A DNA stretch of 64,000 nucleotides, from positions 167,345,063 through 167,409,062 of the forward strand of contig NC_068982.1 of assembly GCF_001194135.2 (NCBI RefSeq), written 5' to 3'. Below are positions 61,613 to 62,329 of the stretch, one piece after another. Under the pieces are notes generated by a model, which searched no databases, was not told where the DNA came from, and saw only the letters and a list, made by a program, of their open reading frames with translations. A program made the translations under genes and the position numbers. Source of the stretch: Octopus bimaculoides (lineage: Eukaryota). Each line of letters opens with the position of its first letter. The stretch's first letter is position 1.

Positions 61613-62329
61613 TTATAACTCATCTTTGATGGCGCTTGGTATCCTTGTGGCTTCCAGAACATCGACCACGTCTTCAACGCTTTTGCGTCGAAGCTCTACT
61701 GCTTTCCAGAGGACCAACTATAAGAACCATAGCATCTGTAGTAGCAGCAGTGGTGCCAGTAGTGGCAGCAGCAGTGGTGGTGAAAGTGTCAGCAGCAGTA
61801 GCTGTTTGTCCATGGGGATGCGGGATCTATCGGAGGCAGATGGTTCCACAGTACGTTCCAGCTGGGTCTATGTGGAAATGAGCAATGTCAATGAAGAGGT
61901 GCCGCTCTCCTCCTCTTCTTCGTCTTCCTCCTCCTCACATCCTTTCCACCCGCTGTCATTGGAATCGAAGATCAACTTGCTGCGATGGCAGACGAAGCGG
62001 TGCTCTGTCTCATCATGTGAGTCGTACAGTACGGCTGGCCACAGTGTGACACGCAGCCTGAGTAGGTTGTCATTTATCGATGATGTCAGCAGTGAACTGT
62101 GGAAGGAGAACCCAGACCGGGATAGTTACAACACTTTCTCTGTGTCCGAAGAGGAGCTTACCCGGATTATAAAGTACCTGGAATCCAAGTTGGACGGCAG
62201 TCAGTGCATCAATTCTTCACTGGACGGCTCAGACAGTGTCATCAACTGCGCATCCAATGACATAAAGCAAGTTGTTTCTCCTACGGTTACATTCATTCTA
62301 GATACCTACTGTAACATGTATCTCTTTGG
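61613..62329 (+). CDS. Candidate Ser-rich coding exon (alternative first or cassette exon of SLK, or nested gene); ATG at 61629
   Basis: 235-aa track ORF, GC- and CpG-rich against the background; ends TTT GG|GTGAGT with the stop inside the donor; possible acceptor ctcag| at 61612; family not recognised. Confidence 0.65.

What the first reader, a model, noticed from the sequence alone, without database searches (positions are those of the whole stretch)
61613..62329. Orphan CpG-rich exon in phase with SLK: possible kinase-less or extended isoform
Seen: a ~235-aa Ser-rich ORF 22 kb into the intron after SLK exon 39483-39616. My hand count is ~27 CpG in 717 nt, against ~11 in the equally long exon 23919-24635. 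It ends GG|GTGAGT, a consensus donor with the stop inside it, in phase 2 like the 39616 donor, so both could splice to the same next exon. An acceptor at 61612 would also be phase 2, giving a frame-preserving 717-nt cassette. Known: SLK/LOK C-terminal coiled coils mediate localisation and dimerisation, and Drosophila Slik has kinase-independent activity. Inference: this is either an alternative first exon (ATG 61629) making a coiled-coil-only SLK with a new N-terminus carrying RRSS, KRCS and RSLS phospho-motifs, or a large cassette exon. I do not recognise the peptide.
Basis: partly seen in the sequence, partly recalled or inferred. Interest (0 to 1): 0.8.

Follow-up and report, generated by a model that had tools for sequence, protein, structure and literature searches.

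The report
Start exon of kinase-less SLK
The 717-base open stretch inside the octopus SLK kinase gene is a real, strongly conserved protein-coding exon. It most likely starts a second, kinase-free protein that joins a previously undescribed head to SLK's coiled-coil tail; public gene models already contain it, but nobody has studied it.

Summary
The ORF 61629-62329, the GG|GTGAGT donor, the phases and the CpG counts are all as stated.

The exon is real:
- Its first 234 residues are identical to the Octopus bimaculoides model A0A0L8HPV4.
- dN/dS against another cephalopod is 0.10.
- HMMER finds 29 relatives, and all nine loci examined end at the same phase-2 GT donor.

Gene models in O. bimaculoides, O. 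vulgaris and two Biomphalaria species join this exon in frame to the PKK (Pfam PF12474) coiled-coil exons, with no kinase domain. The first PKK exon accepts both this donor and the SLK 39616 donor in frame. The order pre-PKK SLK exon, then this exon, then PKK exons is shared by octopus and snail.

An in-frame stop lies 1-63 codons upstream of the ATG in every locus. In two species no acceptor in a compatible phase exists, so the conserved use is as a start-codon exon, not a cassette.

The CpG excess mostly reflects GC-rich coding sequence. A non-coding block at 60900-61333, 98.8% conserved between the two octopus species, is a better promoter candidate.

No RNA reads could be consulted. I file it as a new member of a known kind (KS-WNK1-type kinase-less isoform) with an unnamed N-terminal module.

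The parts
61629..62329 (+). First coding exon of the kinase-less SLK product (the 'N-module'). ATG at 61629, then 233 codons + 2 nt, ending in phase 2.
   Evidence: ORF. 100% identical to residues 1-234 of the O. bimaculoides model P0030/A0A0L8HPV4. dN/dS 0.10 against L001, with all indels in whole codons. Against O. vulgaris, 9 synonymous changes and 1 changed codon.
62330..62335 (+). Splice donor GTGAGT. The stop TGA at 62331-62333 is read only if the exon is left unspliced.
   Evidence: All 9 independent loci carry a GT at the same place, 2 codons + 2 nt after the YCN[IM]Y motif. The first PKK exon in O. vulgaris starts tag|G AAG CAA, which gives ...LFG-KQDL in frame.
61613..61628 (+). Untranslated leader between the candidate acceptor AG (61610-61612) and the ATG. 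The frame is open here, which is why a cassette reading is formally possible in Octopus.
   Evidence: The in-frame TAG at 61584 lies just upstream. Amino-acid conservation with L001 starts at the ATG, not before it.
60900..61333 (+). Conserved non-coding block. It is a candidate promoter and/or 5'UTR exon ending at CACTG|GTAATT (61333/61334). This is inferred, not shown.
   Evidence: 98.8% identity between O. bimaculoides and O. vulgaris, against 91.7-93.2% in the flanking intron and 96.8% for 61334-61612.
61854..61880 (+). Conserved short motif RSSWVYVEM (family consensus RSSW[IV]Y[VML][DE]M) within the disordered Ser-rich half.
   Evidence: Present near the N-terminus in 14 of the family sequences listed. 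The surrounding residues 1-140 have pLDDT below 50.
62055..62329 (+). Helical part of the N-module (residues 143-233). It carries the near-invariant LW.(D/E)NP(D/E).D..TF.VSE..LT..I..LE.QL and F(I)(L/M)(D/E)(S/T)YCN(I/M)Y motifs.
   Evidence: AlphaFold2 on 26 sequences gives helices 143-159, 174-195, 209-215 and 218-232 at pLDDT about 70-82. In the full-length model the last helix runs on through the junction to residue 341. Invariant columns are listed.
39483..39616 (+). Canonical SLK exon just before the PKK region (..TRKFIKDGVMVTSTTSK..DDHFL). Its phase-2 donor CTCAG|gtaagt competes for the same downstream acceptor.
   Evidence: AG + G from the PKK exon gives Arg, so the product reads ..HFLR-KQDLREM.., matching the human FLR-RQELREL.
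9560..17863 (+). SLK kinase-domain exons (9560-9646, 12868-12987, 16067-16147, 17738-17863). The short product bypasses them.
   Evidence: tblastn with a human SLK kinase probe and the window's own peptide.

Best explanation
The window is part of the Octopus bimaculoides SLK (STE20-like kinase) locus. Exon 61629-62329 lies in the roughly 77-kb intron between the last pre-coiled-coil SLK exon (ending at 39616) and the first PKK/ATH coiled-coil exon. By O. vulgaris synteny that PKK exon is about 54 kb beyond the window.

The exon is an alternative first coding exon. Transcription that starts inside the intron gives an mRNA whose ATG at 61629 opens a 234-residue N-module. The start is inferred, probably within the conserved block 60900-61333, possibly with a short 5'UTR intron ending at AG 61612.

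The phase-2 donor at 62329 joins the same acceptor that full-length SLK uses. The result is a protein of about 646 aa made of the N-module plus the PKK coiled coil, with no kinase domain.

The N-module has two parts:
- a disordered Ser-rich half carrying one conserved motif (RSSW[IV]Y.[DE]M) and basophilic Ser sites;
- a helical cap of about 90 aa whose last helix continues into the coiled coil.

Inferred function: in vertebrates and flies the SLK/LOK/Slik C-terminal domain dimerises, targets the apical cortex, and tubulates membrane. When expressed without the kinase it inhibits ERM phosphorylation. The short product is therefore most likely a natural kinase-independent form. It would pair with or compete against full-length SLK at the cortex, with the N-module supplying its own regulation or partners.
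For: Shown by tool results:
- Exon identity: the window ORF equals residues 1-234 of A0A0L8HPV4.
- Architecture: the O. vulgaris model CAI9717770.1 and the Biomphalaria models KAI8755749.1 and KAK0049460.1 have the same build, and Pfam finds PKK only.
- Purifying selection: dN/dS 0.10 with dS saturated, and indels only in whole codons. Against O. vulgaris there are 9 synonymous changes and 1 non-synonymous codon.
- Family: HMMER finds 29 relatives, 25 of them at E<=1e-10.
- Donor: position and phase are invariant in 9 loci.
- Shared acceptor: it is in frame with both donors.
- Synteny: in B. pfeifferi the order is pre-PKK exon, N-module, PKK exons. The N-module lies 4-7 kb upstream of PKK exons in two further lineages, and 54 kb upstream in O. 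vulgaris.
- Start of coding: upstream in-frame stops occur in all loci, and conservation begins at the ATG.
- Upstream block: conserved between the two octopus species.
- Helix continuity: predicted to run across the junction.

From papers:
- SLK dimerises through its coiled coils, and this is needed for activity (PMC5419656).
- The LOK/SLK C-terminal domain localises to microvilli, and alone it acts as a dominant negative on ERM phosphorylation (PMC3518218).
- The Slik coiled-coil domain alone tubulates membrane and drives proliferation (PMC12000455).
Against:
- The gene models may be partly ab initio, so the junction 62329 to PKK exon 1 rests on models, phase and synteny.
- No junction-spanning protein from RNA assemblies turned up in the word-index searches.
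- The transcription start is not located.
- The candidate 5'UTR would carry several upstream ATGs.
- The function is extrapolated from vertebrate and fly constructs that lack the N-module.
Confidence: 0.8

Rival explanations
1. Cassette exon: in Octopus the exon is spliced between 39616 and the first PKK exon, using acceptor AG 61612. This would insert 239 residues into full-length SLK, either instead of or in addition to first-exon use.
For: In O. bimaculoides and O. vulgaris the stretch from 61613 to the ATG is open. 717 nt is a multiple of 3 and both flanking phases are 2. A pyrimidine-rich AG precedes the ATG in three species.
Against: In the L002 species and in Biomphalaria pfeifferi no AG between the upstream in-frame stop and the ATG is in the compatible register. 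In the cephalopod L001 the strong acceptor (ccacag|ATG) is in phase 0. Amino-acid conservation starts at the Met, not at the acceptor. A Met lies 1-35 residues before the first conserved motif in every member that has that motif. A pyrimidine-rich AG before the ATG is equally expected for a 5'UTR intron.
Confidence: 0.1
2. Two separate genes: in molluscs the PKK exons belong only to the N-module transcript, and the kinase gene ends before them. On this view there is no full-length SLK, and this exon is simply exon 1 of an independent coiled-coil gene.
For: The B. pfeifferi annotation splits the locus into a 768-aa kinase gene and an 869-aa PKK gene. The octopus models of the short form also stand alone.
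Against: The pre-PKK exon ends in a consensus phase-2 donor with no stop of its own, so the snail kinase model ends only by reading into the intron. AG + G joins it to the PKK exon to give FLR-KQDLRE, collinear with human SLK. Proteins from other invertebrates, most of them in the list from contigs of only 1.4-2.1 kb and therefore probably transcripts, run through this junction without a break.
Confidence: 0.06
3. Nested unrelated gene: the exon splices to other, non-SLK exons hidden in the intron, and the published models joined it to PKK by mistake.
For: Only 1.7 kb downstream of the exon can be seen in the window. The octopus intron is about 54 kb, which leaves room for other exons.
Against: The exon sits directly upstream of PKK exon 1 on the same strand in at least five lineages, with spacings from 3.6 to 54 kb. 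Its phase always matches the PKK acceptor. Its terminal helix is predicted to continue into the coiled coil. Independent annotation projects made the same join in octopus and in snail.
Confidence: 0.03
4. Chance ORF, or a dead remnant such as a pseudo-exon or repeat.
For: No Pfam, PDB-sequence or Foldseek match. The exon is rich in low-complexity Ser runs.
Against: dN/dS is 0.10 and the frame is kept through four indels. There are 29 relatives with near-invariant motifs. The donor is invariant.
Confidence: 0.01

Closest known systems
KS-WNK1 (kidney-specific WNK1)
   Same: A kinase gene with an alternative promoter and a unique first exon (4a) placed downstream of kinase-coding exons. The product lacks the kinase domain, shares the C-terminal exons, and modulates the pathway of the full-length kinase (PMC3365125, PMC8174809, PMC6014176).
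   Different: It belongs to a different kinase family and a different taxon. Its unique exon is short. Its expression is experimentally established, whereas the form described here rests on gene models and comparative evidence only.
Experimental C-terminal constructs of LOK/SLK and Drosophila Slik (LOK 310-968, SlikCCD 889-1300)
   Same: These have the same retained part, the ATH/PKK coiled-coil domain without the kinase. The constructs localise to the apical membrane and microvilli. They act as a dominant negative on ERM phosphorylation (PMC3518218), or tubulate membrane and drive proliferation (PMC12000455).
   Different: They are artificial truncations. The mollusc product is naturally encoded and adds a conserved 170-550-aa N-module that has no counterpart in those constructs.
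Telokin/KRP from the MLCK gene and FRNK from the FAK gene (recalled from general knowledge, not tested here)
   Same: Non-kinase products made from internal promoters of kinase genes, which reuse the C-terminal exons.
   Different: As far as I recall, they have little or no unique coding sequence. Here the unique exon encodes a conserved module under purifying selection.
Public gene models A0A0L8HPV4 (O. bimaculoides), CAI9717770.1 (O. vulgaris), KAI8755749.1 and KAK0049460.1 (Biomphalaria)
   Same: They contain this very exon or its orthologue, joined to PKK.
   Different: They are labelled 'uncharacterized' or simply 'STE20-like kinase', although they have no kinase domain. Four literature searches on SLK and Slik topics found no paper that discusses such a form, and one further planned search failed.

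Membership tests
SLK/LOK/Slik (GCK-V) locus product | C-terminal PKK/ATH coiled-coil domain (Pfam PF12474) | tested here: met
   P0003 (99.6% identical to the window exon) and P0008 hit PKK at E 1.8e-53 and 3.7e-55. The PKK exons themselves lie outside the window.
SLK/LOK/Slik (GCK-V) locus product | N-terminal Ste20-type protein kinase domain in the same polypeptide | tested here: not met
   Pfam finds only PKK in the 645-836-aa models. The kinase exons lie upstream at 9560-17863 and are not part of this product.
Kinase-less isoform from an intronic alternative first exon (KS-WNK1 type) | A unique first coding exon inside an intron, downstream of the kinase-coding exons and on the same strand | tested here: met
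   Kinase and pre-PKK exons are on the + strand upstream. No PKK exon lies before 64000. The same order is seen in B. pfeifferi.
Kinase-less isoform from an intronic alternative first exon (KS-WNK1 type) | In-frame splicing to exons shared with the full-length kinase | tested here: inconclusive
   Phase and sequence fit for both donors, and four gene models make the join. No RNA reads could be examined.
Kinase-less isoform from an intronic alternative first exon (KS-WNK1 type) | Its own promoter and transcription start within the intron | not testable with these tools
   Indirect evidence only: the block 60900-61333 is 98.8% conserved against about 92% background. Upstream in-frame stops show that coding starts at the ATG.
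Frame-preserving cassette exon of SLK | Acceptor and donor in matching phase, with an open frame from the acceptor, conserved across species | tested here: not met
   Met in the two Octopus species only. No compatible acceptor exists in L002 or L009, and the strong acceptor in L001 is in phase 0.
Known protein domain families (for the N-module) | A significant match to a Pfam model, a PDB sequence or a PDB fold | tested here: not met
   Pfam's best hit is DUF7683 at E 0.12, below its cutoff. P0004 and P0014 match no family. The PDB profile search's best hit is E 0.44. Foldseek against PDB gives 0 matches.

The most novel reading that the evidence does not exclude
The N-module plus PKK protein is an ancient, independently regulated partner or antagonist of SLK. 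It dates back at least to the common ancestor of cephalopods and gastropods. Its unnamed N-terminal domain has two parts: a W-[IV]-Y-x-[DE]-M motif that fits both the YxxM SH2-docking pattern and, in part, an LIR-like pattern, and a helical cap that extends the coiled coil. Together these would re-target or gate the membrane-binding, ERM-inhibiting tail. Molluscs would then make naturally what cell biologists build as 'C-terminal domain only' constructs.
Probability: 0.35. Interest if true: 0.6.

Novelty: new member of a known kind. Interest (0 to 1): 0.42.

Why it matters
Kinase-independent roles of SLK, LOK and Slik are currently inferred from artificial truncations. These roles include membrane tubulation, apical targeting and dominant-negative action on ERM activation.

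A naturally encoded, strongly conserved kinase-free form with its own N-terminal module would show that at least one animal phylum uses this activity as a separate, regulatable product. It would also provide a new conserved domain to study.

For annotation, it explains why several mollusc genome projects split the SLK locus into two genes, and why they label a kinase-less protein as a kinase.

Tried and rejected
I therefore laid no reads and did not try another route.
- Word-index protein searches: these returned neither the octopus nor the full Biomphalaria models, and no junction-spanning proteins from RNA assemblies. Only the exhaustive HMMER scan found the models.
- Bacterial promoter and terminator scan: irrelevant for an animal gene.
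- Domain and fold searches: Pfam, the PDB sequence profile and Foldseek against PDB gave no meaningful match for the N-module.
- CpG-island reading: rejected. The exon's o/e of 0.62 falls within the range of the PKK exons (0.15-1.03) and follows its 50% GC content. The flanks are at 0.18-0.30.
- Organism names for the unnamed relatives: cluster look-ups gave no names apart from Biomphalaria. A search of papers for the run and assembly accessions found nothing. The taxonomic range beyond Cephalopoda and Gastropoda is therefore unknown.
- DNA similarity to the other cephalopod contig, L001: confined to the exon, with no alignable promoter.
- One literature search failed on a term format.

Full report
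**1. Observation**

Measured stop to stop it spans 248 codons, the second-longest gap-free open frame in the window. Serine makes up 26% of residues, and RRSS, KRCS and RSLS are present.

The hand CpG counts are exact: 27 in 61613-62329 and 11 in 23919-24635. This is the highest CpG count of any 700-nt window here.

The exon ends TTTGG|GTGAGT, with the stop inside the donor. SLK exon 39483-39616 is bounded by ttgtag| and CTCAG|gtaagt and ends in phase 2. ATG..62329 also ends in phase 2, and 61613-62329 is 717 nt, a multiple of 3.

The window carries SLK kinase-domain exons at 9560-17863 on the same strand. The exon therefore does sit inside the SLK intron, 21,997 nt after 39616.

**2. It is a real coding exon**

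A first protein search found a 250-aa ORF on a genomic contig of another cephalopod (P0001 on L001). It is 65% identical and ends in the same ...YCNMYLFG|GTGAGT. A more distant 405-aa ORF (P0002) also turned up.

DNA similarity between the window and L001 is confined to the exon, ending about 10 nt past the donor. A codon alignment gives dN 0.18 and dS 1.84, so dN/dS is 0.10. All four indels are whole codons.

Against O. vulgaris the exon differs at 11 nucleotides. Nine are synonymous third-position changes and the other two fall in a single Ser>Pro codon.

An exhaustive HMMER scan of 1.84 billion representative proteins with a three-sequence profile gave 29 hits, 25 of them at E<=1e-10. Nearly all of them stop at the exon's end.

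In nine loci from independent lineages a GT donor stands at exactly the same place, 2 codons + 2 nt after the conserved YCN[IM]Y motif. The donor is always in phase 2, with the pattern [AG]G|GT.

**3. What it belongs to**

Four of the retrieved proteins continue past the exon:
- P0030, UniProt A0A0L8HPV4, 'uncharacterized protein', Octopus bimaculoides, 646 aa;
- P0003, CAI9717770.1, O. vulgaris, 645 aa;
- P0008, KAI8755749.1, Biomphalaria glabrata, 836 aa;
- P0032, KAK0049460.1, B. pfeifferi, 869 aa.

The first 234 residues of P0030 are identical to the window ORF, so the window is O. bimaculoides. After ...YCNMYLFG these proteins read KQDLREMKRLQKSENKQ..., and Pfam finds only PKK (PF12474) in them, with no kinase domain.

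On the O. vulgaris chromosome the first PKK exon begins ...cttgtag|G AAG CAA GAT. GG+G gives Gly for this exon's donor, and AG+G gives Arg for the SLK 39616 donor. The latter yields ..DDHFLR-KQDLREM.., collinear with human ..FLR-RQELREL... One acceptor therefore serves both donors in frame. The snail acceptor behaves the same way.

Synteny is conserved:
- In B. pfeifferi the orthologue of exon 39483-39616 lies at L009 6051-6179, the N-module exon at 9983-11206, and the PKK exons start at 16697.
- In two unnamed lineages (L012, L014) PKK exons follow the N-module within 4-7 kb.
- In O. vulgaris the gap is 54 kb.

The B. pfeifferi annotation splits the locus into a 768-aa kinase gene and the 869-aa PKK gene.

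**4. First exon or cassette?**

In all nine loci an in-frame stop lies 1-63 codons upstream of the first ATG, which is what non-coding sequence would give. Between the window and L001, amino-acid conservation starts at MALGILVAS, not before it. Every member that has the first conserved motif has a Met 1-35 residues before it.

For a cassette between two phase-2 junctions, the acceptor must sit in one particular register.
- In the L002 species and in B. pfeifferi, no AG between the upstream stop and the ATG is in that register.
- In L001 the strong acceptor ccacag|ATG is in phase 0.
- Only the two Octopus species have a compatible AG, at 61612.

The conserved use is therefore as a start-codon exon. 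Occasional cassette use in Octopus cannot be excluded.

A pyrimidine-rich AG 0-25 nt before the ATG in three species suggests a 5'UTR intron.

**5. Promoter clues**

The CpG excess is weaker evidence than it looked. The exon's o/e is 0.62 against 0.18-0.30 in the flanks. However, the PKK exons range from 0.15 to 1.03, and the exon is simply GC-rich at 50%.

A better clue is the block 60900-61333. It is 98.8% identical between O. bimaculoides and O. vulgaris, and 240 nt of it show no difference at all. The flanking intron is 91.7-93.2% identical, and 61334-61612 is 96.8%.

The block ends at CACTG|GTAATT. I therefore infer, without proof, a 5'UTR exon followed by a short intron to AG 61612. That leader would contain several upstream ATGs, so the transcription start remains open.

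**6. The protein**

AlphaFold2 on a 26-sequence alignment predicts that residues 1-140 are disordered. Residues 143-233 form helices 143-159, 174-195, 209-215 and 218-232 at pLDDT about 70-82.

In the full-length model a single helix runs from residue 218 through the exon junction to residue 341, followed by two further long helices. Confidence around the junction is low in that shallow alignment.

The near-invariant positions are in LW.(D/E)NP(D/E).D..TF.VSE..LT..I..LE.QL and F(I)(L/M)(D/E)(S/T)YCN(I/M)Y. The motif RSSW[IV]Y[VML][DE]M is present in 14 members. From general knowledge it fits the YxxM SH2-docking pattern and, in some members, a W-x-x-[LIV] LIR-like pattern. Both are leads only.

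The module has no Pfam, PDB-sequence or PDB-fold relative.

**7. Likely mechanism (inferred)**

- Human SLK dimerises through its C-terminal coiled coils, and this is required for activity towards ezrin (PMC5419656).
- The LOK/SLK C-terminal domain localises to microvilli. When uncoupled from the kinase it acts as a dominant negative on ERM phosphorylation (PMC3518218).
- The Drosophila Slik coiled-coil domain alone tubulates membrane, increases cytonemes and induces over-proliferation (PMC12000455).

A naturally encoded N-module-PKK protein should therefore go to the same cortical sites. There it would either pair with or compete against full-length SLK, or carry out the kinase-independent membrane function. 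The N-module would supply separate regulation.

**8. Comparison and novelty**

The arrangement is that of KS-WNK1. That is a kinase-less product from an alternative promoter and a unique first exon downstream of kinase exons (PMC3365125, PMC8174809, PMC6014176). From memory, telokin and FRNK are similar cases.

The exon is already present in public gene models, though these are unnamed or mislabelled as kinases. Four literature searches on SLK and Slik topics found no paper that discusses a form like this. A planned search for mollusc SLK literature failed on a term format and was not repeated.

I file it as a new member of a known kind with an undescribed N-terminal module.

**9. Limits**

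No RNA data could be consulted. The gene models may be ab initio. The relatives other than Octopus and Biomphalaria are unnamed contigs, so the range of the family is shown only for Cephalopoda and Gastropoda.

Noticed in passing
window 7190-7510(-), 27880-28050(-), 28787-29059(-), 29690-29829(+), 38926-39201(-), 57956-58234(+), 58309-58868(-): The same peptide-like string recurs in ORFs on both strands (..HSQGFGQP.A.ED..PRCHA.GLNPEPCGWETSF.. and ..LPKVPRSGTEPG..WLVSKLLTT..). It looks like an interspersed SINE-like repeat, often next to TA/CA microsatellites and assembly gaps.
   Followed up: no
window 3771-4648 (-): A retroelement fragment, with a reverse-transcriptase-like C-terminal part and a Cys-rich finger. 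It is interrupted by the N gap at 4114-4394, and it is also one of the CpG-richer spots in the window.
   Followed up: no
window 4114-4394, 18947-19294, 28047-28682, 29533-29685, 49466-49571, 52140-52234, 54579-54759: Seven assembly gaps (runs of N). Several inflate the ORF list with X-filled 'ORFs'.
   Followed up: partly
window 60640-60900: A long (CT)n microsatellite directly 5' of the conserved block. Its length differs between O. bimaculoides and O. vulgaris: 88 gap columns in a 150-nt bin.
   Followed up: partly
window 60860-61168 (-): A 102-aa minus-strand ORF overlaps the conserved non-coding block upstream of the exon. I did not test whether it is coding or just a by-product of the CTG/GCA repeats.
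   Followed up: no
L009 1-6209 and 10001-24098 (Biomphalaria pfeifferi); L008 (O. vulgaris): Public annotations split the SLK locus into a kinase-only gene and a PKK-only gene. The snail kinase model ends about 30 nt past the pre-PKK exon, so it probably reads into the intron.
   Followed up: partly
P0021 (B. glabrata KAI8725769.1, 195 aa): A second snail model starts inside the N-module and skips from ..APDFRAND to mid-PKK (..ETFDQELDMLTKQQ..). This is either an annotation artefact or a further splice form.
   Followed up: no
L010 and L011 (sample ERZ25071447): Two contigs from one assembly carry the identical 174-aa N-module ORF, with similar flanks. They are probably haplotigs.
   Followed up: no
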